Below are positions 628-62,449 of a DNA stretch of 64,000 bases, piece after piece. How positions within the stretch are numbered: the first letter of the stretch is position 1; the number at the start of each line of letters is the position of its first letter. The position numbers and the translations under genes were made by a program. The notes under the pieces were generated by a model. It ran no database searches and was not told the DNA's origin. It was given only the letters and a program-made list of their open reading frames with translations. The stretch lies in the IMG/VR virus record IMGVR_UViG_3300033145_003233, positions 124,001-188,000 of that record; one strand, written 5' to 3'.

Positions 628-952
628 AAGCTTTCATCCTATATATAGCATCATACGTTAATTGATCCTTTATATATTGTCCACAATCCTCCCACTTTGC
701 AACAGAAAAATTGTCAAAATTCTTAATATGATAAAAAGGGTCTACATCGCATTTCATCTCTCCACAAGCTATTTTTATACAAAAAGCATATCCCATGCTA
801 TTATCAAGCAACTCAAAATATATATAAAGAAGAGTTTTATCTTCAACCTGATATACCTCCCACTCTTGCCCTTCGATAAAGAAGCTTGTAAGATATTGAT
901 CTGAAGAAATAAGTTTCAATTCTTCTAAATGCTTTTTAACTAAATTTTCCAT
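614..952 (-). CDS. hypothetical protein
   Basis: 112 aa ORF coupled to neighbours. Confidence 0.7.
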   Translation of the reverse strand: MENLVKKHLEELKLISSDQYLTSFFIEGQEWEVYQVEDKTLLYIYFELLDNSMGYAFCIKIACGEMKCDVDPFYHIKNFDNFSVAKWEDCGQYIKDQLTYDAIYRMKAYGST

Positions 953-1730
953 TTATAAAAGGATTGTCCCTCCATATAACATGATTTTTATCAACTCTAT
1001 CTTTGAAATTTTTAGCCATCTTTTTGTAATCTCCTGGTAATATTTTTTTGGGAAGAATATATGTAATGGGATCACTCACAAAATGGGACCAGACATATTT
1101 GAAATTATCTTTATCTATTTGTTGCAAAAAAGATTCTTTCCATATCTTAGAAAAATATTTATTACAACTAATTCTATCATAATGACCATGATATTTGTTC
1201 ACAAATCCTATTTTATCAACATGTAAGGTATACATGTAAAAAGCATAAAAAAAAGTTAGCATGTGACAAGTTTCTGTCCACCACCATGAAACACGGTCAA
1301 AATTAGTATATACCGGGAAGCACACTTTAAAAGCATCAGAATGAAAAGCTAATAAAATAGTGGTTTGATGTTCTATTTTATTAATAAAGTTATAGTAAAC
1401 AGTTCCAATAGCAGGTTGGTACTCTAATAAAAAATCATCAAATATTTGCCATGGATTCTTTCCCTCATCTTCAGGATATTTATCTTTTCTAATACGTAAT
1501 TCAAGGTCATTCTCCAAACAAACATAATATAAATATTTCTTAGGAACTATCTCTGCTAATTTATTTTTACCTTCCCAGCATGTGCTATTAGGAAAAAATA
1601 TACTATTTTTATACTCTACTGGCTTCTTCCACGATAAAATATATACGTCCCTTCCCATCTCTTCTAATGTTTTAACATATTTAGGGATATAGTCTGAAGT
1701 CTGAACTAGATATGCTATTTCTTTAGCCAT
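936..1730 (-). CDS. GT-A fold (GT2-like) glycosyltransferase paralog 12
   Basis: GKNKL helix, DxD position degenerate (LEND), WRDNPFIN end. Confidence 0.65.
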   Translation of the reverse strand: MAKEIAYLVQTSDYIPKYVKTLEEMGRDVYILSWKKPVEYKNSIFFPNSTCWEGKNKLAEIVPKKYLYYVCLENDLELRIRKDKYPEDEGKNPWQIFDDFLLEYQPAIGTVYYNFINKIEHQTTILLAFHSDAFKVCFPVYTNFDRVSWWWTETCHMLTFFYAFYMYTLHVDKIGFVNKYHGHYDRISCNKYFSKIWKESFLQQIDKDNFKYVWSHFVSDPITYILPKKILPGDYKKMAKNFKDRVDKNHVIWRDNPFINGKFS

Positions 1731-2532
1731 TTATAAAAGGGTTATTCTTCCAAATATTATGATCTTTTTTTACTCTTTTTTTGAAATCCTCTGCTAATTC
1801 CAAATATTCTCCAGGATAAGGTTTTTTATATTTAATACCAGTAGAGGATCTACCATTCCTACATTTAAATCCTTCATCTATTTTTTTCTTATCTTCTTCA
1901 TATAATAAAGAAGTTTTATAGAACTTATCCCAGAAATATCTTCTACGATATTTAACTCTTCCACCTCTATGAAGCCCATTCTCCCAACAGATATCAAAAA
2001 AGCTAAGAATATATTTTTCAAAAGCTAGTCTAAAAGTAACCCAATTTATTTGTTCAGTCCAATCCATATTAATTATATCTAGACGATAGTACATGGGGTA
2101 ACATATTTTCATTGCGTCTCTATGAAAAGCCATACAACCAGTGTCTGGCATCCATGTTGTTTCTATTTCTCCCTTTTTTATTTTCTTTTTGTTAGAACAA
2201 TTAGGAAAACTAGGAGAACCAATAGCTGGTTCATATTCTAATAATAAATTCTCGAATTTCTCCAACGCATTAAGATGAGACAAAGATGGATCTCTCATAA
2301 ATACCTCTCCATCCTCATCCATAAATAAATAATATTTATATTTTCTAGAGACAATCTCCGCTAACTTATTTTTGCCTTCTCCATAGGTACATGGAAAGAA
2401 TATACTATTCTTATATTTTACTGGTTTTTTATAAGATAAGAGATATACATCTCTTCCCATTTTATCCAGTATTTCCATATACTTAGGAAGATAATCTGGA
2501 GTATGAATTAAATATACTATTTCTTTATTCAT
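1723..2532 (-). CDS. GT-A fold glycosyltransferase paralog 11
   Basis: GKNKL, YYLFMDED, EYEPAIG. Confidence 0.7.
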   Translation of the reverse strand: MNKEIVYLIHTPDYLPKYMEILDKMGRDVYLLSYKKPVKYKNSIFFPCTYGEGKNKLAEIVSRKYKYYLFMDEDGEVFMRDPSLSHLNALEKFENLLLEYEPAIGSPSFPNCSNKKKIKKGEIETTWMPDTGCMAFHRDAMKICYPMYYRLDIINMDWTEQINWVTFRLAFEKYILSFFDICWENGLHRGGRVKYRRRYFWDKFYKTSLLYEEDKKKIDEGFKCRNGRSSTGIKYKKPYPGEYLELAEDFKKRVKKDHNIWKNNPFING

Positions 2533-3289
2533 TTATAAAGCGATTTTTCCAAATAACGTGTTCTTTGTCTATCCTATTTTTAAAATTGTCTGACATTTCT
2601 TGATATTTTCCTGGACAAGACATTTTAGAAGAAGGCCTATAATGATGAACCATAAAATTAAAATTATCAATATCTTTTTTCTCTAAAAGAAATCTCTTCC
2701 ATATTTTTTTAAAATATCTATTAAGAGGACGTCTTGGATATTCCCCATCACGCTTATTTATAAACATTAATTTATCACATTGTAATATATACGGTTTAAA
2801 AGCATATGTAATAGTCATTAAATATGAGATACAACTCCAAAACCGAGAAACTTTTTCAAAACCTGTATATGCTGGGAACGATATCTCCATCGCATCACTA
2901 TGAATAGCAAATATAATTGGATCATACACTTCTCTATTAACGCCGTATTTAGAAGAAACTGTTCCTATAGCTGGCGTATTATCTAATAAAAATTCCTCAA
3001 ATATCTCCCAAGGATTTTTATTAATATCTTTAGGGTATTTTTCTTTCTTAATAAATAATCCTAGATCATCATCTAACATGACATAATATAAATACTTTTT
3101 AGGAACTATCTCTGCTAATTTATTCCTACCTTCCCATAGAGTGCTATCGGGAAAAAATATGTTATTCTTGTGAGCTAACGGCTCCTTCCAAGAATGTATA
3201 TAAACATCACTCTCCATATCCTCTAGTACTTTAACATAGTCAGGGATATAATCTGGAGTTTGAACTAAATATACAATTTCTTTACTCAT
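2525..3289 (-). CDS. GT-A fold glycosyltransferase paralog 10
   Basis: GRNKL, YYVMLDDD. Confidence 0.72.
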   Translation of the reverse strand: MSKEIVYLVQTPDYIPDYVKVLEDMESDVYIHSWKEPLAHKNNIFFPDSTLWEGRNKLAEIVPKKYLYYVMLDDDLGLFIKKEKYPKDINKNPWEIFEEFLLDNTPAIGTVSSKYGVNREVYDPIIFAIHSDAMEISFPAYTGFEKVSRFWSCISYLMTITYAFKPYILQCDKLMFINKRDGEYPRRPLNRYFKKIWKRFLLEKKDIDNFNFMVHHYRPSSKMSCPGKYQEMSDNFKNRIDKEHVIWKNRFINE

Positions 3290-4127
3290 TTAATAAAGGA
3301 TGATCCTTCCATATAATATGATTCTTATTTATTCTATTCTTAAAATCCTCTACCATTTCTTTATATTTCCCAGGATAAGGCTTTTTATAGCGACCGTCCA
3401 GGGAATGAACCCAGAAAGGGACTCCTATCAATCTGGCTCTTTCCTTATCTTTTTCATATAACAAAGAAGATTTATATAGTTTATGGAAAAACTGCCTAGG
3501 TTTCCTTTTGGTATATTTTCCTGTCCACCTATGCAATTTATTCTGTAATATTATTTTATTACATTGCAAGACACAAGATTTAAAAGCAAGAGCCACATGT
3601 TCCAAATACAACATTGTAGTCCACCACCAACCAGTCTCGTCAAAACCCGTATATAATGGAGAGAATAATTTTAGAGCATCTTTATGAATAGCAGATATAA
3701 TAGGATCATGTATTTTAATAGTATTAGCATCTTTAGTGTCGTCCACATATAGCTCTATAATTTCTTGCTCTTCAAATATTGGCCAAATATAAATAGCCGT
3801 TCCTATAGCCGGTTCATACTCTAATAAAAAATCTTCAAATATCTTCCAAGGATTCTTGCCGACTTCTTCTGGATATCTTTCATCTCTAATATGTAATTCC
3901 ACATCTTCATCTAAAAATACATAATATAAATACTCTTTAGGGACCATTTCTGCCTGCTTATTTCTACCTTCCCAAACAGTGCTATCCGGCAAAAAGATAT
4001 TATTCTTATGTTCTAATGGCTTTTTCCACGAAAGTATATATACATCTCTTCCCATGTCCTCTATGATTTTAACAAAATCAGGGATATAGTCTGGAGTCTG
4101 AACTAAATATGCTATATCTTTATTCAT
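3282..4127 (-). CDS. GT-A fold glycosyltransferase paralog 9
   Basis: GRNKQ, YYVFLDED. Confidence 0.72.
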   Translation of the reverse strand: MNKDIAYLVQTPDYIPDFVKIIEDMGRDVYILSWKKPLEHKNNIFLPDSTVWEGRNKQAEMVPKEYLYYVFLDEDVELHIRDERYPEEVGKNPWKIFEDFLLEYEPAIGTAIYIWPIFEEQEIIELYVDDTKDANTIKIHDPIISAIHKDALKLFSPLYTGFDETGWWWTTMLYLEHVALAFKSCVLQCNKIILQNKLHRWTGKYTKRKPRQFFHKLYKSSLLYEKDKERARLIGVPFWVHSLDGRYKKPYPGKYKEMVEDFKNRINKNHIIWKDHPLLNE

Positions 4128-4899
4128 TGATAAAAGGATTATCTTTCCAAAAAATATGATTTTTATTTACTCTTTTTTTAAAATCTTCTGCCATTTCTTT
4201 GTATCCATTGGGGCAAATTTTATTATAATATCTCGGAATAATAAAAATGCTATGAACAAGAGAAAATATATAATCTATCGTATTTCTATCTTCTTCTCTT
4301 AATAAAGCATTTTTAAATAATTTACATAAAAATCTAAACTTACCTTTGCGAGGATATTCTCTATGATATTTATTTATCGTTAATAATTCATCACACGATA
4401 ATATGTATGGCTCAAAAGCAAGTATTGTAATAATTAGATGAAAAATAGTAGCCCAAAGCCAGGAAGTTTGATCAAAATCTGTGTACACAGGAAAACAAAT
4501 ATCAATAGTGTCTTTATGCATGCCCATAATAATAGTATCATAGAATTTTTTTACTTTCTTGTCGTGATCGCGAAAAAAAACTGCACCTATAGCAGGTTTA
4601 TATTCCAACAAAAAGTTATCAAATATCTCCCAAGGATTCTTGTTTGTATTCTCGTCCTTGATTCTTAACTCTAAATCATCCTCTGTAAATACGCAATATA
4701 AATACTTCTTTGGAACTATTTCTGCCAATTTATTCCTGCCCGTCCAGCATGTGCCGTTAGGAAAAAATATACTATTTTTATGCTCTACTGGCTTCTCCCA
4801 CGATAAAATATATACGTCCCTTCCCATCTCTTCTAAAGTTCTAACATAATCAGGGATATAGTCTGGTGTTTGAATTAAATATGCTATTTCTTTATTCAT
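4120..4899 (-). CDS. GT-A fold glycosyltransferase paralog 8
   Basis: GRNKL, YCVFTEDD. Confidence 0.68.
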   Translation of the reverse strand: MNKEIAYLIQTPDYIPDYVRTLEEMGRDVYILSWEKPVEHKNSIFFPNGTCWTGRNKLAEIVPKKYLYCVFTEDDLELRIKDENTNKNPWEIFDNFLLEYKPAIGAVFFRDHDKKVKKFYDTIIMGMHKDTIDICFPVYTDFDQTSWLWATIFHLIITILAFEPYILSCDELLTINKYHREYPRKGKFRFLCKLFKNALLREEDRNTIDYIFSLVHSIFIIPRYYNKICPNGYKEMAEDFKKRVNKNHIFWKDNPFINE

Positions 4900-5716
4900 T
4901 TATAAAAGGATGATCTTTCCAAATAACATGATTTTTATCAATTCTATTTTTAAAGTCTTCAGCCATTTTTTTATACTTGCCAGGATAAGGTTTTTCATAT
5001 TCTCCGGCAGGTTCTCGATTAACCCATAACACATAAGCATTATCTTTATCCTCTTGACATAACAAAGATTTTTTACATATATCATACAGAAGCTTATTAG
5101 ATCTGATATGCTGAGATGTTTCTCCTCTGTGAAATTTATTTAGTAATAACAATTTATTACATTGCAATAACGATGATTTTGAAATTGCCGCCATAAAGAG
5201 CAGATGACTAGTACATGTCCAAAACCAAGAAGAATCATCAAATCCAGTATACATTGGAAAACATATGTTCATAATATCTTTATGAATAGCCATTATGATT
5301 ACCTCGAATTCTTTTAAGGTATTTGTTTCTTCATCACTTAAATATGTCAACATAGGGCTATTAGATGTCCCCCTGCCGCAATAAGCTGTCCCTATGGCAG
5401 GCTCATATTCCAATAAGAAATCATCAAATATTTTCCATGGATTCTTTCCCTCATCTTCAGGATATCTCTCTTCCCTAACCAATAAATTTACATCATCATC
5501 TAAAAACACATAATACAAATAGTCCTTTGGAACTATCCCTGCTAATTTATTCCTGCCTGTCGCAAAAGTGCTATTAGGAAAGAAAATGCTATTCTCATGC
5601 TTCACTGGTTCTTTATAAGAAAGTATATATACATCTCTTCCCATATCCTCTAACACTTTAACATAATCAGGGATATAATCAGAAGTCTGGACTAAATATA
5701 CTATTTTTTTATTCAT
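4892..5716 (-). CDS. GT-A fold glycosyltransferase paralog 7
   Basis: GRNKL, YYVFLDDD. Confidence 0.72.
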   Translation of the reverse strand: MNKKIVYLVQTSDYIPDYVKVLEDMGRDVYILSYKEPVKHENSIFFPNSTFATGRNKLAGIVPKDYLYYVFLDDDVNLLVREERYPEDEGKNPWKIFDDFLLEYEPAIGTAYCGRGTSNSPMLTYLSDEETNTLKEFEVIIMAIHKDIMNICFPMYTGFDDSSWFWTCTSHLLFMAAISKSSLLQCNKLLLLNKFHRGETSQHIRSNKLLYDICKKSLLCQEDKDNAYVLWVNREPAGEYEKPYPGKYKKMAEDFKNRIDKNHVIWKDHPFINE

Positions 5717-6590
5717 CTTTTAATAAAGGATGATCTTTCCAAAAAATATGTTTCTTATTTATTCTGTTCTTAAAATTATTAACTATTTTTTTATATTTTC
5801 CTGGATATGGTTTTTTATATACTCCATCACAATACCCTTTTTCGAAAAAACGCCCTTCAGGTCCATATCTAATATTTCCATTATAATCGGGAGGAGGGGG
5901 ATCATTTTGATAAGGGTCTAAAAAGGCACGATCTTGGTCTTCTTTATATAATAAAGATTTCTTATAGATGGCAGAATAAAAACGGGGGGCACGATGCCTG
6001 TCACAATTTATTCTACGACCCTTATTTATAAATGTTAAATTATTATCTTGTAATACACAAGATTGAAATGCTATTTTATGTGTAATTCTGGCAATTGCCT
6101 CTGTCCACCATATCGAAATGTGGTCAAAACCAGTAAACATGGGAAAACATATGTCAAGAGCATCTATATGATATGCCAACATAGCACATTCAGTGCGATA
6201 TGTGGTTTCAGTTTGTTCTTCTATTTCTCTTATCTTTTTATATTTGAGTCTTCCCTCATAATAAACGCATCCTATAGCTGGCTCATACTTTAATAAAAAG
6301 TCATCAAATGTCTTCCACGGTTTTTTTTTAATTAATAGTTTATTTCTTACATATAATTCAACATCATCATCTATCTGAACATAATATAAGTATTTTTTAG
6401 GAACTATTTCTATTAATTTATTTCTGCCAGTAGACCATGTGCTATCAGGAAAAAATATATTGTTTTTATGCTCTACTGGTTTTTTATAAGAAAGGATATA
6501 AACATCTCTTCCCATATCCTCTAATACTTTAACATAATCAGGAATAGTATCTGTTGTTTGAGCTAAATATACTATGTCTTTATCCATCAT
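5709..6590 (-). CDS. GT-A fold glycosyltransferase paralog 6
   Basis: GRNKL, YYVQIDDD. Confidence 0.72.
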   Translation of the reverse strand: MMDKDIVYLAQTTDTIPDYVKVLEDMGRDVYILSYKKPVEHKNNIFFPDSTWSTGRNKLIEIVPKKYLYYVQIDDDVELYVRNKLLIKKKPWKTFDDFLLKYEPAIGCVYYEGRLKYKKIREIEEQTETTYRTECAMLAYHIDALDICFPMFTGFDHISIWWTEAIARITHKIAFQSCVLQDNNLTFINKGRRINCDRHRAPRFYSAIYKKSLLYKEDQDRAFLDPYQNDPPPPDYNGNIRYGPEGRFFEKGYCDGVYKKPYPGKYKKIVNNFKNRINKKHIFWKDHPLLKDE

Positions 6591-7404
6591 TCAATAAAGG
6601 ATGATCTTTCCATATAACATGTTTTTTATTTACTTTATTCTTAAATCCTTTTACCATCTTTTTGTATTTTCCTAGATAAGGTTTTTTATATTCTTTCTCT
6701 GAAAAACGATTCTCCCATGATACATACGCTTCTTTTTTGTCTGCCTCCAATAATAAAGAATCTTGAAACATCTTATATAAGAAGTTAAAATCTACTATTC
6801 TTTTATATTTTTTATGATGCCTGTGAAACCTATTATTTATTATGAGCCTATTACATTGTAATATATAAGGATAAAAAGCTAACATTCTAGTAAGTAAAAG
6901 GGTCCCACCTGTCCAATACCATGTAACCTCATTAAATCCTCCAAATATGGGAAAACATAAATCTAAAGTATCTTTATGAAGGCCAGAAATAATACACTCA
7001 TATTCTTTAACTGTGTTAATTTCCTTGTTATCGTCTAAATATGAGACAAACCCACCATAAGAGCTATTATCACAAGAAACCGTTCCGATAGCGGGCAGAT
7101 GCTCTAATAAAAAATTCTCATATACTTTCCAAGGATGTTTATCATTAGGATATTTATCTTTCCTAATTAATAACTCTAAATCATCATCTAAAAACACATA
7201 ATATAAATATTTCTTAGGAACTATCTCTGCCAATTTATTCCTGCCTTCTGACCATGCACAATCAAACAAGAAGGTGTTATTCTTATGGTTAACTGGTTTT
7301 TTATAAGAAAGAATATAAACGTCTCTACCCATATCTTCTAATACCTGAACGTAATCGGGAATGTAGTCGGGTGTTTGAACTAAATATGCTATTTCTTTAC
7401 TCAT
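6580..7404 (-). CDS. GT-A fold glycosyltransferase paralog 5
   Basis: GRNKL, YYVFLDDD. Confidence 0.72.
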   Translation of the reverse strand: MSKEIAYLVQTPDYIPDYVQVLEDMGRDVYILSYKKPVNHKNNTFLFDCAWSEGRNKLAEIVPKKYLYYVFLDDDLELLIRKDKYPNDKHPWKVYENFLLEHLPAIGTVSCDNSSYGGFVSYLDDNKEINTVKEYECIISGLHKDTLDLCFPIFGGFNEVTWYWTGGTLLLTRMLAFYPYILQCNRLIINNRFHRHHKKYKRIVDFNFLYKMFQDSLLLEADKKEAYVSWENRFSEKEYKKPYLGKYKKMVKGFKNKVNKKHVIWKDHPLLNDG

Positions 7405-8221
7405 TAATAAAAGGATGTCCTCTCCATAAAATGTGCGACTTGTCTATTCTATTTATAAAATTCTTCGCCATTTTTTTATATCTACCATTGCTAGGTTTTT
7501 TATATTCTTTATGAAGACAAGAATTACGAAAATGGAATGCATATGCTAATTTCTCCTTGTCCCCATCCTCCAATAAAGAGTCCTGATATATCTCAATAAG
7601 ATCATGATAATTAATTTCTCTAGGATATTCCCTATGCAATCTATCATTAAAGGTTAATTTATTACATTGTAAGACAAATGGAGATAAAAAAAACATACTA
7701 GTTGTTGAATATATCCATCCAGGCCACCACCAAGAAAAACTATCATAATGAGAACAAATGGGATAACAAACATCTATGACATCTTTATGAGCAGCAGAGA
7801 TAATAGAATTATGGAACCTGACAACATTTATCTCTTTAGTATCATCTATATACGTTGCTGCTCCGCTATTTGAAGCCTTCCCACAATAAACACTCCCAAT
7901 AGCAGGCATATGCTTTAATAAAAAATCTTCAAATATCTCCCATGGATTTTTGTCTATTTCTTCTGGATATCTCTCCTCTCTTACAAATAATTCTACATCA
8001 TCATCTAACAGAACATAATATAGATATTTCTTCGGGACTATCTCTACTAATTTATTTCTACCTTCGGCCCATGTACTATTAGGAAAAAATATATTGTTCT
8101 TGTGATCTATAGGTTTTTTATAAGACAATAAATAAACATCTCTTCCCATATCCTCTAATGTTTGAACGTAATCTGGAATATAATCTGGTGTCTGAACTAA
8201 ATATACTATTTCTTTACTCAT
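7397..8221 (-). CDS. GT-A fold glycosyltransferase paralog 4
   Basis: GRNKL, YYVLLDDD. Confidence 0.72.
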   Translation of the reverse strand: MSKEIVYLVQTPDYIPDYVQTLEDMGRDVYLLSYKKPIDHKNNIFFPNSTWAEGRNKLVEIVPKKYLYYVLLDDDVELFVREERYPEEIDKNPWEIFEDFLLKHMPAIGSVYCGKASNSGAATYIDDTKEINVVRFHNSIISAAHKDVIDVCYPICSHYDSFSWWWPGWIYSTTSMFFLSPFVLQCNKLTFNDRLHREYPREINYHDLIEIYQDSLLEDGDKEKLAYAFHFRNSCLHKEYKKPSNGRYKKMAKNFINRIDKSHILWRGHPFINE

Positions 8222-9044
8222 TTATAAAGGGATGGTCCTTCCAAAGAATATGATCCTTTTTTACCTTATTTTTAAATTCTTCCATTAAATTTTTATATTT
8301 GCCAGGATAAGGTTTTTTGTATTCTCCTGGAATAGGGTCCTTTTTATAAACAAATTCTAAATACACCTCATCCTTATCTTTTTTATTTATTATAGAAGAA
8401 CCAAAAAACCAGAACAAGGTGACTTTAGGAAAAACCCCATATTCAGGCCTGTGAAGATTATTTTTTAATATCAACTTATTACATTGCAATATAGAATTAG
8501 AAGCAAAAGCTATTTTAGTAGTTAAGATATAACAACATGCAGGCCATACCATACTAAATCTATCAAAACCTAAAAATAGAGGAAAGCATAAATCTAAAAC
8601 ATCCTTGTGAATAGCAGATAATATAGGCTCATGTTCTTTAAGAGTATTTATTTCTTTGTCGTCATCCAAATAATGTTTAAACTTGGCTTCAGTTAGCTCG
8701 TTAGAACAATAAACCGTTCCTATAGCAGGTTCGTATTTTATGAGAAAATCCCCAAATATTTTCCAAGGATTTTTATCAACATCTTCTGGATATTTTTTCT
8801 CTCTTACAAATAATTCCACATCATCGTCTATCATAACATAATATAGATATTTCTTAGGGACTATCTCTGCTAATTTATTTCTGCCTGAAGACCATGTGCT
8901 ATCAGGAAAGAATATACTATTCTTATATTCTACAGGCTTTTTCCATGAGAGGATATAAACATCTCCTCCCGCAGCCTCTAACATTTTAACATAGTTGGGA
9001 ATATAATCTGGAGTTTGAACTAAATATGCTATTTCTTTATTCAT
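8214..9044 (-). CDS. GT-A fold glycosyltransferase paralog 3
   Basis: GRNKL, YYVMIDDD. Confidence 0.72.
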   Translation of the reverse strand: MNKEIAYLVQTPDYIPNYVKMLEAAGGDVYILSWKKPVEYKNSIFFPDSTWSSGRNKLAEIVPKKYLYYVMIDDDVELFVREKKYPEDVDKNPWKIFGDFLIKYEPAIGTVYCSNELTEAKFKHYLDDDKEINTLKEHEPILSAIHKDVLDLCFPLFLGFDRFSMVWPACCYILTTKIAFASNSILQCNKLILKNNLHRPEYGVFPKVTLFWFFGSSIINKKDKDEVYLEFVYKKDPIPGEYKKPYPGKYKNLMEEFKNKVKKDHILWKDHPFINE

Positions 9045-9876
9045 TAATAAAAGGATGGTCCTTCCACAAAAAATGATCTTTATCTACTTCGTTTTTGAAT
9101 CTATCTATCATCTTTTTATATTTGTATGGATAAGGTTTCTCATAGTCATCTGGAACAGAATCATTTTCATAACTAAACTCTAAATATGTTTCTTTTTTAT
9201 CTCCTTTATTCAATAGAGAATTAGCAAACATCCAAAAAAGGATATTAGTATCTAACCCTCCTCTATGTCTCTCCCTGTGGAGGCTATTCTCTAATGCCAA
9301 TTTATTACATTGTAATATAGATGCATGAATACCAAAAGCTATCTTTGTAATTAATATGTATAAACTGGCCGTCCAGCACCATGGTTTATGGGCCTCATCG
9401 AACTTTAAACAGACAGGGAAACATAAATCTAAAGCTTCTCTATGGACAGCAGAAATAATAGGCTCATGCTCCTTAATAGTATTGATCTTTTTACTATCAT
9501 CTAAATAATGTCTAAAACGAGCTTTGGGGTGAGTGGAATTACAATAGACTCCCCCTATAGCTGGCTCATGCTTCAATAAGAAATCATCAAATATCTTCCA
9601 AGGATTACTGCTCTCGTTAGGATACCTTTCTTTTCTTATATGTAATTTTATATCATCATCTAGAAAGACATAATATAAATATTTCTTAGGGACTATCTCT
9701 GCCAATTTATTCCTACCAGAATAACATGTACTATCAGGAAAGAATATATTATTCTTATGAGCTATTGGCTTTTTATAAGACAATAAATAAACGTCTCTTT
9801 CCATATCTTCTAATGTTTGAACAAAATCTGGGATATAATCGGAAGTTTGAACTAAATATGCAATGTTATTATTCAT
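9037..9876 (-). CDS. GT-A fold glycosyltransferase paralog 2
   Basis: GRNKL, YYVFLDDD. Confidence 0.72.
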   Translation of the reverse strand: MNNNIAYLVQTSDYIPDFVQTLEDMERDVYLLSYKKPIAHKNNIFFPDSTCYSGRNKLAEIVPKKYLYYVFLDDDIKLHIRKERYPNESSNPWKIFDDFLLKHEPAIGGVYCNSTHPKARFRHYLDDSKKINTIKEHEPIISAVHREALDLCFPVCLKFDEAHKPWCWTASLYILITKIAFGIHASILQCNKLALENSLHRERHRGGLDTNILFWMFANSLLNKGDKKETYLEFSYENDSVPDDYEKPYPYKYKKMIDRFKNEVDKDHFLWKDHPFINE

Positions 9877-10708
9877 TGATAAAAGGATGATTTCTCCAAA
9901 GAATATGTTTCTTATTCACTCTCGTTTTAAAGTCTTCTACCATTTCTTTATATTTGTACGGATAAGGTCTTTTATATTCTTTATCGGGAGAATAGAGCCA
10001 AGAAGGAGAAGACATTAATGTTATTATATCTTTATCTGTTTCTTTTAAAAAAGAAGATTTATATAACTCATGAAAAAACTTTCCAGGATATAATAAATAT
10101 TTTCCAGTATGTCTTAATCTATCTGTGTTTTTTAATACTATTTTATTACATTGTAAAATACAGGACTTAAAAGCAAGTATAATATTTCTGGTGTATATGC
10201 CAGAAGCCCAATATATAGAAATTTTGTCAAAACCAGTATATATAGGAAAACATAGTTTCATAGCATCTTTATGGACAGCAGATAATATGGGTTCATGTTC
10301 CTTAACGGTCATTATGTCCATAGCATCATCTAAATACTTTGGTACAAGATTACCTTTTAATACAGGGTAGAAACAGAAACAGCTTCCTATGGCCGGTTTA
10401 TGCTCTAATAAGAAGTTCTCAAATATTTTCCAAGGATTTTTATTAGCATCTTCTGGATAATTTTTTATCTGGATGTTTAAATCTACATCGTCATCTAAAA
10501 ATACATAATATAGATATTTCTTAGGGACTATTTCAGCTAATTTATTTCTTCCTTCTGTCCATGTGCTATCTGGAAAAAATATATTGTTTTTGTGTTTTAC
10601 CGGCTTCTTCCATGAGAGAATATAAACTTCTCTTCCGATGTCCTCGATCATTTGAACATGATCGGGGATATAATCGGGGGCCTGAATTAAATATACTATC
10701 TCCTCCAT
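9869..10708 (-). CDS. GT-A fold glycosyltransferase paralog 1
   Basis: GRNKL, YYVFLDDD; first gene of array, GGTGGGG RBS. Confidence 0.72.
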   Translation of the reverse strand: MEEIVYLIQAPDYIPDHVQMIEDIGREVYILSWKKPVKHKNNIFFPDSTWTEGRNKLAEIVPKKYLYYVFLDDDVDLNIQIKNYPEDANKNPWKIFENFLLEHKPAIGSCFCFYPVLKGNLVPKYLDDAMDIMTVKEHEPILSAVHKDAMKLCFPIYTGFDKISIYWASGIYTRNIILAFKSCILQCNKIVLKNTDRLRHTGKYLLYPGKFFHELYKSSFLKETDKDIITLMSSPSWLYSPDKEYKRPYPYKYKEMVEDFKTRVNKKHILWRNHPFINE

Positions 10709-44654: not shown

Positions 44655-46058
44655 TTATAATTTCCATTTGTATTCCATAGAAGGAACAGGACAACTACCT
44701 ATAATATCATAGAAAAGAGAGGATTGAGATTGATAAACTCTTATTCTATGTCTTTTGTAATATTCTCCCTTATATTTGTAACTATAAGGGAATACTTTAC
44801 ATATTTTACCATATTCTTTATCAATTTTTTCAACAATCATCTGTTGATTATCTTTTGTGAAACATTCACTACATAGAATTATTACAACCTGTTTGGTGCT
44901 ACTATTTTTTCTTCTCTGATAACTCGTTCCATCATCCATAAACCAATTCAACAAAGAAACAGGAGAAATATCTATATCTTCTGGAATCACTTTTTTATAA
45001 TTGTTCCATTCGGGATACCATTTTCTATATAACGGTTTTAATTCTTTATGAGACAAGCTCCTGATAGAGTATGCAGTATAAAATTCTTTTTTAAATCCCC
45101 ATTTTTTACTAGGAAAAGAAATCTCTTTTTTAATCTTCATTCTATTTTTATTAAAAATTTGTTTATAAACATACTCTATATGATCTTTACCAATATTCTT
45201 TTTATAAAAACGAGGATTAGATATATTACTCTTTCTATTATATACCCCTAAACCTGCATCCCCCAATAAAGAACCTTCTATTACAGGAATATTAAAAATA
45301 AAGCCATCTTCTTCTCTATTGCAAGTTAGCCCCTCACTGATATTCCTTACATTAATATTATGACGTAGAAGAGACTGTCTAGCAGAGTTAGGAGTCTTTG
45401 CCCCGCATAACTTTGTTATATTTCTGGTGCTACATTTTTCTTCAACATATTTTTGTTCTAACCATTCTTTATCATTCAATAATTCATAATAAAAAGATTT
45501 AGAAACTACATAGCGACGAGCTTCTCTATTATCTCTGATTTTTATATCAAATTTTCTTAATGCCCTTATTACGTTTCCACTATCACAACCTATCAATTTT
45601 GCCATCTGTTTAGATGATTGAGTCTCTTCAATATATTTTTGACATAACCATTCTCTACTTTCTAGCTCCTTATATTTAGATTTATATTCTTTTAATTTCC
45701 CAGCTTCGCTAATAGTTCTTGTAGAAATATTATGTCTTTTAAGTGCTGTAAATACTGATTTTTGATTAGAATTAGCTAACTCTGCTACTTGATAAGAGGT
45801 AAGTTGCTCTGTTATGTATTTCTGATAAAGCCAGTCTTTGTTATTTAGTTTTTCTGCTTTAAATTTTTTCTTGCCTTTTCTTTTTTTCGCAGCAGAAGAA
45901 CAATTACGAACTTTTATATCAAATTTTCTCAAACATCTTAAAACACTGCTAGGATTAACTCCTATTTCTTTGCCAATATCAACGGTGGATAATTGATCTG
46001 TTGTATACTTTCGAAAGAGCCAATCTTTATCATTTAAATACTTATTTGGTAATGCCAT
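44655..46058 (-). CDS. double-motif LAGLIDADG endonuclease with N-terminal HTH-like repeats
   Basis: IEGSLLGDAGL and LLNWFMDDGT; four LN/ExxxWLxxKY repeats. Confidence 0.85.
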   Translation of the reverse strand: MALPNKYLNDKDWLFRKYTTDQLSTVDIGKEIGVNPSSVLRCLRKFDIKVRNCSSAAKKRKGKKKFKAEKLNNKDWLYQKYITEQLTSYQVAELANSNQKSVFTALKRHNISTRTISEAGKLKEYKSKYKELESREWLCQKYIEETQSSKQMAKLIGCDSGNVIRALRKFDIKIRDNREARRYVVSKSFYYELLNDKEWLEQKYVEEKCSTRNITKLCGAKTPNSARQSLLRHNINVRNISEGLTCNREEDGFIFNIPVIEGSLLGDAGLGVYNRKSNISNPRFYKKNIGKDHIEYVYKQIFNKNRMKIKKEISFPSKKWGFKKEFYTAYSIRSLSHKELKPLYRKWYPEWNNYKKVIPEDIDISPVSLLNWFMDDGTSYQRRKNSSTKQVVIILCSECFTKDNQQMIVEKIDKEYGKICKVFPYSYKYKGEYYKRHRIRVYQSQSSLFYDIIGSCPVPSMEYKWKL

Positions 46059-46125: not shown

Positions 46126-47430
46126 TTATTTCCCAAATTCTAATAAATATTTAAAATTAGACTGAGAAGGTCTATATACAATAAACTCATCATTTAATAT
46201 CCCACTAACACTAGCTTTAGCCCAAGTGCTATCGTAACCATTTTTAGGAAAGCTTCCCCATCTATCAGTAGGGGTATAGCATTTCCCCATAGCTACATCT
46301 GTAATAAATAAAAAACATCTATTATTATGAGAACCGTCCCAATATCCATAACTATAATTTAAACTTTTAGTTGAAGATGAGGCAAAATAACATCCTCTAC
46401 CAAAAAGGGATCCAGTAACATGGACAGAAGCAGCGGGAGGAATTATTAATCCCTGACGAAGTATACTCAAAATATGATGGCTGCGTGTTCCATGATAAAG
46501 ACTTTTAATATTCCCAACATTTTTCCCATCTCTTTCAAATGCCTCTTCCATTATATTTATAGAAACAGTATAAACAGTTTTTAGTTTTAAATGATTGCAG
46601 GAATGAGATCTTCTACGAGTTTTATTTATTTTTTCACTTATTTTGTCAATAACTTTTTTGTCAGTAACTATTTTCATTCCAACATTAAAAATTTGTGGAG
46701 TATCATCTTTTTTAGTTTTTTTCTTTTTCTTTTTAGGAGCAGCAGCGGTTGTAACTCCTACAAAAGAGGCGTCCAACCCATCTAATAAATCATTCTCTTG
46801 TTGAACAGTTGAAAGGTCAGGGAGTATATCTTCCGGAGACATTCTACTCCTGCCAAAATCTCTTGGAATAAGAGAAAGATACTCATTAAGTGCTTCCTCA
46901 ATATCCCAATTATCATCTGCTATTTCATCGGATATACTGCTTAAAAGACTTCGTGCTCTTGCCACTTGTGCAGGAACAACTACGCCCTGTGTAGTTCTAA
47001 ATTGTGCGGTGCTTGTATCATAAGTAATCCTCCCTTTTGTTGCTGTTAATATATTATGAGCATTAACATCAACTAAGTAATCAACCAGTTTTTGAACAAG
47101 AGGGTTTGAGTGCTTAATCTGCTTGCGTGCTATGGCTTTTATATCACCATTTCTTACTGAGGCTGTAGTAGCTGCTCCTGTTACTGTCCCGCTTCCTTCT
47201 ACAACTTCATTTTCTATGTAACCCTTTTTCTCTTTTGACCTAATCTTAGTCTCCATAAAAGAGCGACCTTCTCCATACCATGTTTTGCTTTGGGTGCTTG
47301 CTGAATGCCCCTGTCTCCCCCACTCACTCATTACATCGTCATTATCATAGAGAGTAACATTCCAATACTTGTTAGCGTTATTCCCTAAATTGGTAAGGCT
47401 AAATTTTTTGTGTTCAACTACTGTCGGCAT
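46126..47430 (-). CDS. WGR-domain poly/mono(ADP-ribose) polymerase (PARP family)
   Basis: NKYW..WGRQG; LYHGT, FGRGCYFA, SLNY, NDEFIVY (H-Y-E triad). Confidence 0.9.
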   Translation of the reverse strand: MPTVVEHKKFSLTNLGNNANKYWNVTLYDNDDVMSEWGRQGHSASTQSKTWYGEGRSFMETKIRSKEKKGYIENEVVEGSGTVTGAATTASVRNGDIKAIARKQIKHSNPLVQKLVDYLVDVNAHNILTATKGRITYDTSTAQFRTTQGVVVPAQVARARSLLSSISDEIADDNWDIEEALNEYLSLIPRDFGRSRMSPEDILPDLSTVQQENDLLDGLDASFVGVTTAAAPKKKKKKTKKDDTPQIFNVGMKIVTDKKVIDKISEKINKTRRRSHSCNHLKLKTVYTVSINIMEEAFERDGKNVGNIKSLYHGTRSHHILSILRQGLIIPPAASVHVTGSLFGRGCYFASSSTKSLNYSYGYWDGSHNNRCFLFITDVAMGKCYTPTDRWGSFPKNGYDSTWAKASVSGILNDEFIVYRPSQSNFKYLLEFGK

Positions 47431-47757: not shown

Positions 47758-47763
47758 TATAAT

Positions 47764-47836
47764 ATCCCCGGAAGGACTTGAACCCTCACAAACCCAGATT
47801 CGTAGTCTGGTGCTCTGTCCATTTGAGCTACGGGGA
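47764..47836 (-). tRNA. tRNA-Arg(ACG)
   Basis: CCAGA-CTACGAA-TCTGG. Confidence 0.9.
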
Positions 47837-47843
47837 CAATAAA

Positions 47844-49397: not shown

Positions 49398-49474
49398 CAC
49401 CTCAGGTAGGGATCGAACCCACATGTGTCCATTTACCCTTTCATCTGCTTAGAAGGCAGAGGGGATACTGAGGC
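49398..49474 (-). tRNA. atypical tRNA-Arg(TCT) lacking a normal D-arm
   Basis: acceptor GCCTCAG/CTGAGGT, TCTGC-CTTCTAA-GCAGA directly after a 7-nt connector, T-arm GTGGG-TTCGATC-CCTAC. Confidence 0.75.
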
Positions 49475-55614: not shown

Positions 55615-55645
55615 AAAGTAGCACCGCCTAAGCAGTGCTACGTTT

Positions 55646-55775
55646 GTAGATGTGTGTGAGCAAATAAGGATTTAGCGTGCTGCCATTACACTATAGGATT
55701 GATCTCTCAATCCTAGCAAGATTCGAACTTGCTCTGCTCGTTCCGTAGACGATAACTTATTCACATTCAACCTAC
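55646..55775 (-). ncRNA. circularly permuted tRNA-Arg(ACG)-like RNA
   Basis: order: anticodon arm, T-arm, acceptor 3' strand, GAGA loop, acceptor 5' strand, D-arm; termini complementary. Confidence 0.8.
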
Positions 55776-61837: not shown

Positions 61838-62449
61838 CTATAGGGTGAAATCCCTACCTTTACAGAAATCAGATATAGCCTGCATTATCTTCTTAATCTC
61901 AACCCTATAGGGACCACCAAACCAATAATTCTGAGTTTTTAGCTCAGTGAGTAGTTTTACTATTAATTCACATAGGTCGAATACATTGCTATAGTTCTTC
62001 TGATTCTTATCTGAAAACCTTTCTAGATTCTCATATTGAGTAGTAAGAGTTTTAAGGTCTTCTGTGATCTGCCCTAACTCTCCATCCATTTCTTTTTTCG
62101 CGGAAAGAAAAGTACTGACACTACTCATTTGTTGTTTCTCTTCAGTCCATCCTCTTACCCACCAATTAGAAGAATCTTGAGTTAAAGAACCACTACCATA
62201 AGGATTATCTTTAAGTTGCTTACCATCCATAAAAGCTATCTTACCTTCTGCATAAGCCTCTGACATATTAATATTGTAGAGAATAAGCTCTTCTGTAGAA
62301 GTTACTGTTTCAGATAGTTCTATTTCGGTGTTACAGTTACTACATTTTATACAACATTTACCATCTTCCCTAGACCCTATAAAAAGAGTATCATGGTAAC
62401 ATTTATTACATTTTAGCATTTTATATCCCCTGCTTAATAACATCGTCAC
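61838..62449 (-). CDS. zinc-ribbon/coiled-coil protein with RMF-like motif
   Basis: CNKC/CSNC; YAEGKIA..NPYG..WWVRGW. Confidence 0.65.
   Translation of the reverse strand: MTMLLSRGYKMLKCNKCYHDTLFIGSREDGKCCIKCSNCNTEIELSETVTSTEELILYNINMSEAYAEGKIAFMDGKQLKDNPYGSGSLTQDSSNWWVRGWTEEKQQMSSVSTFLSAKKEMDGELGQITEDLKTLTTQYENLERFSDKNQKNYSNVFDLCELIVKLLTELKTQNYWFGGPYRVEIKKIMQAISDFCKGRDFTL

What the first reader, a model, noticed from the sequence alone, without database searches (positions are those of the whole stretch)
55646..55775. Circularly permuted tRNA-Arg(ACG) in a bacteriophage tRNA operon
Seen (minus strand): 5' stem GTGAATAAG; anticodon arm TCGT-CTACGGA-ACGA-G; T-arm GCAAG-TTCGAAT-CTTGC; TAGGATTGA-GAGA-TCAATCCTA (acceptor stem closed by a GNRA loop); TA; D-arm GTGT-AATGGCA-GCAC-GC; 3' stem CTTATTTGC. 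Joining C27 to T28 would rebuild a full cloverleaf with a 5-bp anticodon stem. Known: permuted tRNA genes occur in some algae and an archaeon and need splicing and ligation. Bacterial YrlA Y RNAs have a similar T-acceptor-D order with a closed acceptor, but a Ro60-binding stem replaces the anticodon arm. Inference: either a phage permuted tRNA matured by cleavage and ligation, or an unchargeable tRNA decoy that keeps a real anticodon arm. No Ro60/TROVE or RNA ligase gene is seen in the window.
Basis: partly seen in the sequence, partly recalled or inferred. Interest (0 to 1): 0.85.

Follow-up and report, generated by a model that had tools for sequence, protein, structure and literature searches.

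The report
Phage Y-RNA-like tRNA mimic
The "permuted tRNA-Arg" is real sequence, but it is best read as a Y-RNA-like tRNA mimic with a sealed acceptor stem, a kind of RNA already known from bacteria and phages, here in an unusual orphan form inside a huge phage's tRNA array.

Summary
On the minus strand, 55775-55646 folds into a two-tier terminal stem that encloses four parts in order: an anticodon-arm-like hairpin (loop CUACGGA), a T arm, a 9-bp acceptor hairpin closed by GAGA, and a D arm. An identical copy occurs in a second sample's assembly.

It is not a lone oddity. Two covariance models built without it both recover it full-length, at 50.3 and 43.9 bits. One came from a phage RNA family next to DUF2828 genes. 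The other came from RNAs lying just upstream of phage Ro60 genes.

Un-permuting into a cloverleaf is not special. All 28 Ro60-adjacent phage Y RNAs tested the same way were also called tRNAs, with 18 different anticodons.

In a related 350-kb phage, the RNA at the same position (between tRNA-Pro and tRNA-Ala) has UUU instead of ACG and a CUCG-closed acceptor. The terminal stem covaries among relatives, and GGUUGA(A/U)U is conserved where Y RNAs carry the Ro60 motif GNCGAANG.

Verdict: a YrlA-class Y-RNA-like tRNA mimic, not a decoding tRNA. It is atypical in three ways: no Ro60 gene in the 64-kb window, a variant motif, and a location inside a tRNA operon.

The parts
55770..55775 (-). Outer terminal stem, 5' strand (GUAGGU)
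   Evidence: Pairs with AUCUAC at 55651-55646. Across 4 homologues it is 100% paired, and 3 of 6 pairs show compensatory changes. R2 aligns it to the outer helix of Ro60-adjacent Y RNAs.
55765..55769 (-). Internal-loop motif UGAAU. Together with the flanking bases it reads GGUUGAAUG.
   Evidence: Conserved as GGUUGA(A/U)(U/G) in L462 (3 copies), L543 (2 copies) and L544. It occupies the place of the Y RNA motif GNCGAAN0-1G (PMC4201824) and differs at one base (C to U).
55756..55764 (-). Inner terminal stem, 5' strand (GUGAAUAAG)
   Evidence: Pairs with CUUAUUUGC at 55668-55660. 85% of cells are paired across the four sequences (window plus three L462 copies).
55753..55755 (-). Linker UUA. With the next base it reads UUAU, matching the YUAY of YrlA.
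   Evidence: GUUAUCG is invariant in the homologues. A conserved YUAY before the V loop is described in PMC4201824.
55737..55752 (-). Anticodon-arm-like hairpin UCGU-CUACGGA-ACGA(G), equivalent to the 'V' stem-loop of YrlA
   Evidence: It is 15 of 17 identical to the hairpin of the Ro60-adjacent Y RNA in L370. The triplet and the stem are not conserved in the L543 orthologue.
55733..55736 (-). Variable-loop-like linker CAGA
   Evidence: It aligns to the 4-5-nt linker in both models.
55716..55732 (-). T arm GCAAG-UUCGAAU-CUUGC
55694..55715 (-). Closed acceptor-like hairpin: 7 bp plus 2 extra bp, capped by a GAGA tetraloop
   Evidence: Searches show 9 consecutive pairs. Relatives also have closed acceptors, for example CUCG in L543 and UUCG in many Ro60-adjacent RNAs.
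55675..55693 (-). UA, then D arm GUGU-AAUGGCA-GCAC, then GC
55669..55674 (-). 3' linker UAAAUC
   Evidence: GCUAAA(N) follows the D arm in relatives and in Ro60-adjacent Y RNAs.
55660..55668 (-). Inner terminal stem, 3' strand (CUUAUUUGC)
55652..55659 (-). Internal loop, 3' side (UCACACAC)
   Evidence: A similar CA-rich stretch, (C)ACA(U/C)A, lies before the outer stem in the homologues.
55646..55651 (-). Outer terminal stem, 3' strand (AUCUAC)
55618..55641 (-). Downstream hairpin GUAGCAC-N10-GUGCUAC, followed by UUU and then tRNA-Ala. It is probably part of the primary transcript's 3' trailer.
   Evidence: The consensus scan does not flag it as a terminator. Whether it belongs to the element is uncertain.

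Best explanation
The element is a roughly 130-nt non-coding RNA of the bacterial/phage Y RNA kind (YrlA-like).

**What it is.** It is a tRNA mimic whose 5' and 3' ends lie in a long bipartite stem, and whose acceptor stem is a sealed hairpin.

**How it is probably made (inferred).** It is transcribed with the tRNA operon. Processing of the flanking tRNA-Pro (3' end) and tRNA-Ala (5' end) then releases it.

**Fold.** The T arm, closed acceptor and D arm would fold into the tRNA elbow and acceptor/T coaxial stack (inferred by analogy with the YrlA crystal structure). The extra hairpin copies an anticodon arm. The terminal stem with its conserved internal loop (GGUUGAAUG) is the counterpart of the Ro60-binding module (shown by alignment and conservation; binding is not shown).

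**Most likely mode of action (inferred).** It acts as an adaptor. The stem module binds a Ro60-type ring protein, encoded either elsewhere in the 548-kb phage genome or by the host. The tRNA-like module recruits a tRNA-binding partner or an exoribonuclease, as in Ro60-Y RNA-PNPase complexes. It cannot be aminoacylated as transcribed, and it is not a decoder of Arg codons.
For: - **Architecture confirmed**.
- **Model R1** was built from 18 phage RNAs and excludes the window. It scores the element at 50.3 bits, E = 3.5e-9, full length.
- **Ro60 adjacency of close relatives.** RNAs with the same D arm and no CAGCAA motif ('type 2') lie next to a 540-590-aa protein with TROVE and vWA_Ro60 domains.
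- **Independent Ro60 set.** In 80 phage Ro60 loci chosen by the protein alone, R1 finds 55 matches in about 48 loci. Nearly all lie 50-600 nt upstream of Ro60 on the same strand.
- **Model R2** was built from 21 of those Ro60-adjacent RNAs. It finds the window element as the top hit: 43.9 bits, E = 5.6e-9, model positions 1-134, with both tiers of the terminal stem aligned as standard pairs.
- **Un-permutation control.** 28 of 28 Ro60-adjacent Y RNAs un-permute into ARAGORN-callable tRNAs, with 18 different anticodons among them.
- **Close homologues in huge-phage tRNA arrays** (L462, 3 copies; L543; L544). They conserve GGUUGA(A/U)U, UAAGUUAUCG and the 3' CUUAUU...CA(U/C)AUC, while the outer stem covaries.
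- **Positional orthologue.** The L543 tRNA order is syntenic with the window. Its RNA between tRNA-Pro and tRNA-Ala has a CUCG-closed acceptor and a non-matching 'anticodon'.
- **Literature.**
  - YrlA RNAs have T, closed AS, D and a less conserved V stem-loop, plus the GNCGAAN0-1G and YUAY motifs (PMC4201824).
  - The YrlA crystal structure is a close tRNA mimic without a free CCA end (bioRxiv 10.1101/312249).
  - Phage phiLo Ro60 binds Yrl RNAs encoded upstream of its gene and assembles with host PNPase (PMC12135203).
Against: - No Ro60 or DUF2828 homologue is present in any frame of the 64-kb window (HMM search, stops read as X). None is present in the L543, L544 or L462 loci either.
- The canonical motif is not met exactly: GUUGAAUG versus GNCGAANG.
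- R2's own alignment puts UGCGcAGG opposite UGAAUGUG, so the motif correspondence is my register, not the model's.
- Rfam YrlA gives no hit even at E <= 10.
- The last base of the variable linker is A, whereas a pyrimidine is conserved there in YrlA (10.1101/312249).
- Tandem tRNAs score up to 37 bits with R2, so part of the score is generic tRNA-likeness.
- Expression, RNA ends and protein partners are untested.
Confidence: 0.7

Rival explanations
1. A Ro60-independent tRNA decoy. The sealed tRNA look-alike, with an authentic anticodon loop (U33-A34-C35-G36), soaks up or diverts a tRNA-directed enzyme. Candidates include a host anticodon nuclease used in anti-phage defence, or a tRNA-modifying enzyme such as the A34 deaminase. 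This would protect the phage's and the host's real tRNAs.
For: - No Ro60 gene lies in the window or in the loci of the closest relatives.
- The element sits in a tRNA array.
- Across the wider family, loop positions 32, 33, 37 and 38 are kept (CUNNNAA in 29 of 36 and in 27 of about 47). The triplet itself is hypervariable between otherwise near-identical scaffolds. That pattern would fit an arms race.
- The hairpin with ACG is identical in L462_Yb even though its T arm and acceptor differ. However, the search pattern fixed the stem.
Against: - In the nearest relatives (L543 both copies, L544, L462 Ya and Yc) the hairpin is degenerate or differs in sequence, while the terminal-stem module is what stays conserved.
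- The same loop signature occurs in RNAs that are plainly coupled to Ro60 or DUF2828 genes.
- No nuclease or deaminase link was tested.
Confidence: 0.15
2. A genuine circularly permuted (or two-piece) tRNA-Arg(ACG) gene. RNase P and 3' trimming open the acceptor hairpin and CCA is added. The terminal stem is then either excised and ligated, or kept as an extra arm. The result is a chargeable tRNA.
For: - The un-permuted sequence is called tRNA-Arg(ACG).
- A 7-bp acceptor follows directly after the T arm, and U8, A14, G18G19, U33 and the T-loop consensus are present.
- M. smegmatis YrlA, which has a 7-bp stem, is cleaved by RNase P and receives CCA in vivo (PMC4201824).
- In the wider family, long acceptor loops often begin N-CCA.
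Against: - All 28 Ro60-adjacent Y RNAs tested un-permute equally well.
- The positional orthologue reads UUU in a 3-bp hairpin without U33.
- The acceptor is extended to 9 bp and capped by GAGA.
- There is no bulge-helix-bulge motif, and bacteria lack the splicing endonuclease (my own knowledge).
- Position 20 is C rather than the ArgRS identity base A20, which the window's real tRNA-Arg(ACG) has (identity rules from my own knowledge).
- It would be redundant with tRNA-Arg(ACG) at 47762-47838.
- No RNA ligase was seen among the 20 window proteins scanned.
Confidence: 0.06
3. A decaying remnant of two tandem tRNA genes: the 3' part of one followed by the 5' part of the next. It would have no function of its own.
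For: - Dimeric tRNAs are the proposed evolutionary source of YrlA (10.1101/312249).
- They give partial hits with the same models (first scan).
Against: - The acceptor strands are perfectly complementary over 9 bp with a tetraloop.
- Both tiers of the terminal stem are intact.
- Homologues in at least three other phage contigs keep the structure, with compensatory changes and conserved loop motifs.
- The element is not close to any tRNA of its own array (at most 62% identity).
Confidence: 0.05

Closest known systems
YrlA-type bacterial and phage Y RNAs (Chen et al. 2014, PMC4201824; Rfam RF02553; crystal structure 6CU1, bioRxiv 10.1101/312249)
   Same: - Same order of parts: 5' stem strand, YUAY, stem-loop upstream of T, T arm, closed acceptor-like stem, UA, D arm, 3' stem strand.
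- tRNA-type T and D loops.
- No free CCA end.
- A terminal stem with an internal loop at the place of the Ro60 motif.
   Different: - The motif is GUUGAAUG, not GNCGAANG.
- No Ro60 gene lies within 64 kb, whereas YrlA genes usually lie within 4 kb of one.
- It is embedded in a tRNA operon of a 548-kb phage.
- The upstream stem-loop is a full anticodon-arm copy.
- There is no Rfam hit.
Yrl1/Yrl2 of Thermus phage phiLo with phage Ro60 (PMC12135203)
   Same: Phage-encoded Y-like RNAs with a stem / internal-loop / stem module. They are proposed to bridge Ro60 and host PNPase.
   Different: - Those RNAs lie directly upstream of the Ro60 gene and carry CGAA.
- A tRNA-like domain is not described for them.
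Circularly permuted tRNA genes of Cyanidioschyzon merolae, some green algae and Thermofilum pendens (my own knowledge; cited in PMC3400036 and PMC4238349 as permuted tRNA)
   Same: The 3' half lies upstream of the 5' half, and a cloverleaf can be rebuilt by joining them.
   Different: - Those genes use a bulge-helix-bulge junction, a splicing endonuclease, a ligase and a circular intermediate, and they yield functional tRNAs.
- None of these features is seen here.
- Here the orthologue does not keep the anticodon.
M. smegmatis YrlA (PMC4201824)
   Same: [quoted passage not shown]
   Different: Here the stem is extended to 9 bp and capped by a GNRA tetraloop. Cleavage has not been tested.
Phage CAGCAA-type permuted tRNA-like RNAs next to DUF2828/DUF7788 genes
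   Same: - The same tRNA-like core and anticodon-like hairpin.
- R1, built from them, scores the window element at 50 bits.
   Different: - Their terminal module is UUAGGNNNC-NNN-CAGCAA ... GNNNCCUGUU.
- They are coupled to a Ro60 paralogue.
- The window element lacks that motif.
T4 species 1 RNA (rnaC)
   Same: A stable tRNA-like RNA encoded in a phage tRNA cluster.
   Different: It has normal topology: the ends pair as the acceptor and the T arm lies near the 3' end. It is not permuted and not closed.

Membership tests
YrlA-type Y RNA | T-arm-like stem-loop with the tRNA T-loop consensus | tested here: met
   GCAAG-UUCGAAU-CUUGC. It aligns to the T arm in R1 and R2.
YrlA-type Y RNA | Closed acceptor-like stem-loop directly 3' of the T arm, with no free CCA end | tested here: met
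   A 9-bp hairpin with a GAGA loop.
YrlA-type Y RNA | UA dinucleotide, then a D-arm-like stem-loop with GG | tested here: met
   UA, then GUGU-AAUGGCA-GCAC.
YrlA-type Y RNA | 5' and 3' ends pair in a stem interrupted by an internal loop (the Ro60 module) | tested here: met
   Two-tier stem in the minimum-energy fold. Standard pairs in the R2 alignment. Covariation of the outer stem.
YrlA-type Y RNA | GNCGAAN0-1G motif near the 5' end | tested here: inconclusive
   - The window has GUUGAAUG, with U in place of C.
- It is conserved as GGUUGA(A/U)(U/G) in 6 related copies.
- UGAAG variants also occur next to Ro60 genes (L514; L347, L357, L358).
- R2 aligns a different register.
YrlA-type Y RNA | Conserved YUAY before the stem-loop upstream of T | tested here: met
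   UUAU at 55755-55752. GUUAUCG is invariant in the homologues.
YrlA-type Y RNA | Encoded within a few kb of a Ro60 (TROVE) gene on the same strand | tested here: not met
   No Ro60 or DUF2828 HMM hit in the six-frame 64-kb window. The rest of the 548-kb contig could not be searched.
YrlA-type Y RNA | Reaches the Rfam RF02553 gathering score | tested here: not met
   No hit at E <= 10. The same model also misses Ro60-adjacent phage Y RNAs in 18 loci, so the test has little weight.
YrlA-type Y RNA | Bound by Ro60 in vivo or in vitro | not testable with these tools
   Needs EMSA or immunoprecipitation.
Circularly permuted tRNA gene | 3' half upstream of 5' half, with the joined halves giving a cloverleaf | tested here: met
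   ARAGORN calls tRNA-Arg(ACG) on the joined halves. The feature is not discriminating, because 28 of 28 Y RNAs do the same.
Circularly permuted tRNA gene | Bulge-helix-bulge motif at the leader/trailer junction | tested here: not met
   The junction is UUA opposite UAAAUC beside a 9-bp helix. There is no 3-nt bulge / 4-bp helix / 3-nt bulge arrangement.
Circularly permuted tRNA gene | Anticodon and identity conserved in orthologues, with aminoacylation identity elements present | tested here: not met
   The L543 positional orthologue reads UUU in UCG-AAUUUAA-CGA. Position 20 is C, not A20 (identity rule from my own knowledge).
Circularly permuted tRNA gene | Mature tRNA with a new 5'/3' end at the acceptor and CCA | not testable with these tools
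   Needs RNA-seq or RACE.
Two-piece (permuted) tmRNA | tRNA-like domain plus a tag reading frame; detected by ARAGORN | tested here: not met
   ARAGORN finds no tmRNA in the window. The element is only about 130 nt and has no reading frame.

The most novel reading that the evidence does not exclude
Anticodon-bearing Y-like RNAs in huge-phage tRNA arrays may work without Ro60, in one of two ways.

- As programmable tRNA baits: the copied anticodon loop (here ACG) is aimed at a particular host tRNA-directed defence nuclease or modification enzyme.
- As chargeable two-piece tRNAs: RNase P opens the acceptor hairpin and CCA is added, giving a tRNA with an extra arm.

Either would be a new phage strategy at the level of translation.
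Probability: 0.15. Interest if true: 0.8.

Novelty: new variant of a known kind. Interest (0 to 1): 0.5.

Why it matters
**Annotation.** Annotators should not call such loci permuted tRNA genes. The cloverleaf that appears on un-permutation is generic to this RNA class.

**Biology.**
- Y-RNA-like tRNA mimics appear to be far more common in phages than Rfam captures.
- They often keep a faithful anticodon-loop copy with a free-running triplet.
- They occur as orphans inside the tRNA operons of 300-550-kb phages, without an adjacent Ro60 gene.

**Open questions this raises.**
- What do these RNAs bind in such phages?
- Does the anticodon copy have a role of its own?

**Side result.** A second, very abundant phage class (the CAGCAA type) is tied to a Ro60 paralogue (DUF2828). 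This gives a testable RNA partner for a protein family of unknown function.

Tried and rejected
**Searches that led nowhere**
- My first collection pattern had the T-loop-to-tetraloop spacing wrong by one base. It found only a tandem tRNA pair.
- Megablast and blastn against GenBank phages found no relative of the window. Only tRNA genes matched.
- Rfam at the gathering threshold and at E <= 10 gave only a 17-bit linear tRNA alignment that needs two mismatched acceptor pairs and overlaps tRNA-Pro. I rejected it in favour of the perfect 9-bp hairpin.

**Candidate identities checked and rejected**
- T4 rnaC and rnaD. rnaC is tRNA-like but has normal topology, and rnaD has no tRNA-like fold.
- The skipping-rope / tLRNA families of a 2026 preprint. 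These are different architectures, are already in Rfam, and were not hit.
- A two-piece tmRNA.
- A recent local origin from the window's own tRNAs. Identity is at most 62%, and tRNA-Arg(ACG) is not the closest.

**Attempts to find Ro60 in the rest of the 548-kb contig**
- A 4-sequence alignment returned only the best 80 of 438 loci.
- The Ro60 of L370 returned 20 loci.
- The contig was in none of these, which settles nothing.

**Other**
- The metagenome scan for the hairpin sequence mostly returned ordinary bacterial tRNA genes. Eight Y-like elements were kept.
- Literature searches found no description of anticodon-bearing or tRNA-array Y-like RNAs, nor of the CAGCAA class.

Full report
**1. 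The observation**

The minus strand of 55775-55646 reads as follows:
- GUAGGU (outer stem)
- UGAAU
- GUGAAUAAG (inner stem)
- UUA
- UCGU-CUACGGA-ACGA-G
- CAGA
- GCAAG-UUCGAAU-CUUGC
- UAGGAUUGA-GAGA-UCAAUCCUA
- UA
- GUGU-AAUGGCA-GCAC
- GC-UAAAUC
- CUUAUUUGC (inner stem)
- UCACACAC
- AUCUAC (outer stem)

The 132-nt RNA folds on its own into this five-branch structure. Joining the two halves in silico gives a sequence that ARAGORN calls tRNA-Arg(ACG).

ARAGORN and Rfam find 27 and 25 ordinary tRNA genes on the same strand between 47.6 and 59.6 kb. Neither reports the element.

The window is part of a 547,943-bp viral contig. The same 141 nt occur unchanged in a 22.6-kb contig from a different sample, so misassembly is unlikely.

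**2. It belongs to a large class**

A pattern scan of IMG/VR, followed by a script that demands a T arm, an immediately following self-complementary 7-bp hairpin and a D arm, turned up many such elements in phage tRNA regions.

Many of them share a terminal module: 5'-UUAGGNNNC-NNN-CAGCAA ... GNNNCCUGUU-3'. It gave 149 motif hits, 107 of them with a closed acceptor and 90 of those unique.

An alignment of 31 members shows compensatory changes in 16 of 24 predicted pairs, spread over the terminal stem, T arm, acceptor and D arm.

Thirty-six members carry a 5-bp hairpin 3-6 nt upstream of the T arm. In 29 of them the loop is CUNNNAA, with a hypervariable triplet.

Model R1 was built from 18 of these RNAs. 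It finds the window element at 50.3 bits, E = 3.5e-9, over the full length. Other window hits are at most 22 bits.

**3. Link to Ro60**

A scan keyed on the D arm, T loop and loop signature, but not on the terminal module, returned 104 loci. Among them were 17 closed-acceptor elements without CAGCAA ('type 2'), and the window's element is one of these.

I clustered all ORFs in the fetched loci.
- A 540-590-aa protein is present in 18 loci, most of them type-2 loci. It has TROVE and vWA_Ro60 domains.
- The largest cluster (65 loci) is a roughly 470-aa DUF2828+DUF7788 protein.
- That protein is homologous to Ro60 over its last 250 or so residues (hhalign probability 98.9%).
- In 53 of 53 loci holding both, the nearest CAGCAA element lies on the gene's strand. 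In about half of them it lies within 700 nt upstream.

As an independent test I fetched 80 phage Ro60 loci by protein similarity alone.
- R1 finds 55 matches in about 48 of them. Nearly all lie 50-600 nt upstream of Ro60 on the same strand.
- A script finds 78 T / closed-acceptor / D elements in 53 of the 80 loci.
- Their 5' consensus is CCCGGUGCG(C/A/U)AGG...GGUUAC and their 3' consensus is ...CCGACUUGAUCUCGGG.
- CUNNNAA loops occur in 27 of them.

These are the phage YrlA-type Y RNAs of Chen et al. 2014 (PMC4201824). That paper describes T, AS (closed), D and a 'less conserved' V stem-loop upstream of T, together with the GNCGAAN0-1G and YUAY motifs.

Rfam's YrlA model does not reach its threshold on any of 18 such loci. 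Its silence on the window therefore carries little weight.

Model R2 was built from 21 Ro60-adjacent RNAs. It ranks the window element first: 43.9 bits, E = 5.6e-9, positions 1-134, with both tiers of the terminal stem as standard pairs.

The hairpin of the Ro60-adjacent RNA in L370 (UUCGU-CUAUGGA-ACGAG) is 15 of 17 identical to the window's.

**4. Why it is not a decoding tRNA**

- I un-permuted 28 Ro60-adjacent Y RNAs in the same way. ARAGORN called every one a tRNA, with 18 different anticodons. The cloverleaf is therefore generic to the class.
- The closest relatives come from huge-phage tRNA arrays.
  - L462 has three tandem copies.
  - L543 comes from a 350-kb contig whose tRNA order (Gln-Asn-Ile-...-Val-Asp-Ser-Ser-...-Pro-...-Ala-...-Thr-Phe-Lys-Lys-His-Cys) is syntenic with the window.
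  - L544 comes from a 298-kb contig.
- L543 has a copy exactly between tRNA-Pro and tRNA-Ala, as in the window. Its hairpin is UCG-AAUUUAA-CGA and its acceptor is closed by CUCG.
- Among these relatives the hairpin varies freely. What is conserved is GGUUGA(A/U)(U/G), UAAGUUAUCG and the 3' CUUAUU...CA(U/C)AUC. The outer stem changes by compensatory substitutions (GUAGGU/AUCUAC, GCAGGU/AUCUGC, ACGGGU/AUCCGU, AUGGGU/AUCCAU).
- The acceptor is a 9-bp GNRA-capped hairpin, and there is no bulge-helix-bulge motif.
- D-loop position 20 is C. The window's true tRNA-Arg(ACG) has the ArgRS identity base A20 (identity rule from my own knowledge).
- The array already has tRNA-Arg(ACG).

**5. What remains atypical**

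- No Ro60 or DUF2828 homologue is detectable in any frame of the window, nor in the L462, L543 and L544 loci.
- I could not search the rest of the 548-kb contig.
- The motif at the Ro60-module position is GUUGAAUG rather than GNCGAANG.
  - UGAAG variants do occur next to Ro60 genes.
  - The correspondence is my register, not R2's.
- The element is no closer to the window's own tRNAs (at most 62%) than to foreign Y RNAs.
- Twenty window proteins scanned with Pfam include HNH and LAGLIDADG endonucleases and a PARP-like protein, but no RNA ligase or TROVE protein.

**6. Mechanism**

Shown:
- the fold class;
- homology or strong similarity to Ro60-coupled phage Y RNAs;
- a conserved terminal module, contrasted with a variable hairpin.

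Inferred:
- co-transcription with the tRNA operon and release by tRNA processing;
- an L-shaped tRNA-like domain, as in the YrlA crystal structure (10.1101/312249);
- binding of a Ro60-type protein through the terminal module;
- recruitment of a tRNA-binding factor or exoribonuclease, as in Ro60-Y RNA-PNPase complexes, which a phage Ro60 also forms with host PNPase (PMC12135203).

A Ro60-independent decoy role for the anticodon copy cannot be excluded.

**7. Verdict**

The headline 'permuted tRNA-Arg' is the less likely reading. The feature is a new variant of a known kind: an orphan, anticodon-arm-bearing, YrlA-like Y RNA in a huge phage's tRNA operon.

Noticed in passing
L056:2095-2212 and 2344-2462, L082, L216, L222 and many other IMG/VR loci (L123-L234): A very abundant phage RNA class. 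It has a permuted tRNA-like core and a terminal module 5'-UUAGGNNNC-NNN-CAGCAA ... GNNNCCUGUU-3'. It lies just upstream, on the same strand, of a roughly 470-aa DUF2828+DUF7788 protein, which is a Ro60 paralogue (hhalign probability 98.9%). It is not in Rfam at threshold, and I found no paper on it.
   Followed up: partly
L056:2347-2394: The CAGCAA module (terminal stem, then CUUACAGCAA, with the 3' end ...CUG) matches the conserved motif and layout of Dictyostelium Class I RNAs (Rfam RF01414; weak hit at 17.6 bits, E = 1.4). DUF2828 proteins also occur in eukaryotes, so a shared protein partner is conceivable. This is speculative.
   Followed up: no
window 936-10708 (-): Twelve head-to-tail paralogous ORFs of 254-293 aa, each overlapping the next by a few bases. 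The one tested has no Pfam hit.
   Followed up: no
window 46126-47430 (-) and 44655-46058 (-): A WGR + PARP regulatory + PARP catalytic domain protein sits at the edge of the tRNA array, next to a LAGLIDADG endonuclease. Several HNH/HTH homing-endonuclease-like ORFs are scattered between the tRNA genes.
   Followed up: no
window 49398-49474 (-): A weak Rfam tRNA match (30 bits, just above threshold) that ARAGORN does not call. It may be a degenerate or unusual tRNA.
   Followed up: no
window 61838-62449 (-): A 203-aa ORF with a sub-threshold match to the ribosome modulation factor domain (PF04957, 23 bits).
   Followed up: no
window 55615-55641 (-): A hairpin GUAGCAC-N10-GUGCUAC followed by UUU, between the element and tRNA-Ala. 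In relatives the element is instead followed by a U run. It may be a processing or 3'-end signal.
   Followed up: no
L462:1852-2292 (-): Three Y-like elements lie in tandem between tRNA-Ile and tRNA-Val in a related phage fragment. Their hairpins differ from each other, but the terminal module is shared.
   Followed up: partly
Loci with long acceptor loops, e.g. L017:6369, L105:6634, L038:4744, L220, L195: When the acceptor hairpin loop is 8 nt or longer, it almost always begins N-CCA right after the 7-bp stem. This suggests that some family members are opened to a CCA end.
   Followed up: no
L296:13672-13752: An 81-nt stretch in a phage tRNA array reaches the Rfam tmRNA threshold (55 bits) while spanning the whole 374-position model. 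It is probably a minimal tRNA-like piece and not a full tmRNA.
   Followed up: no
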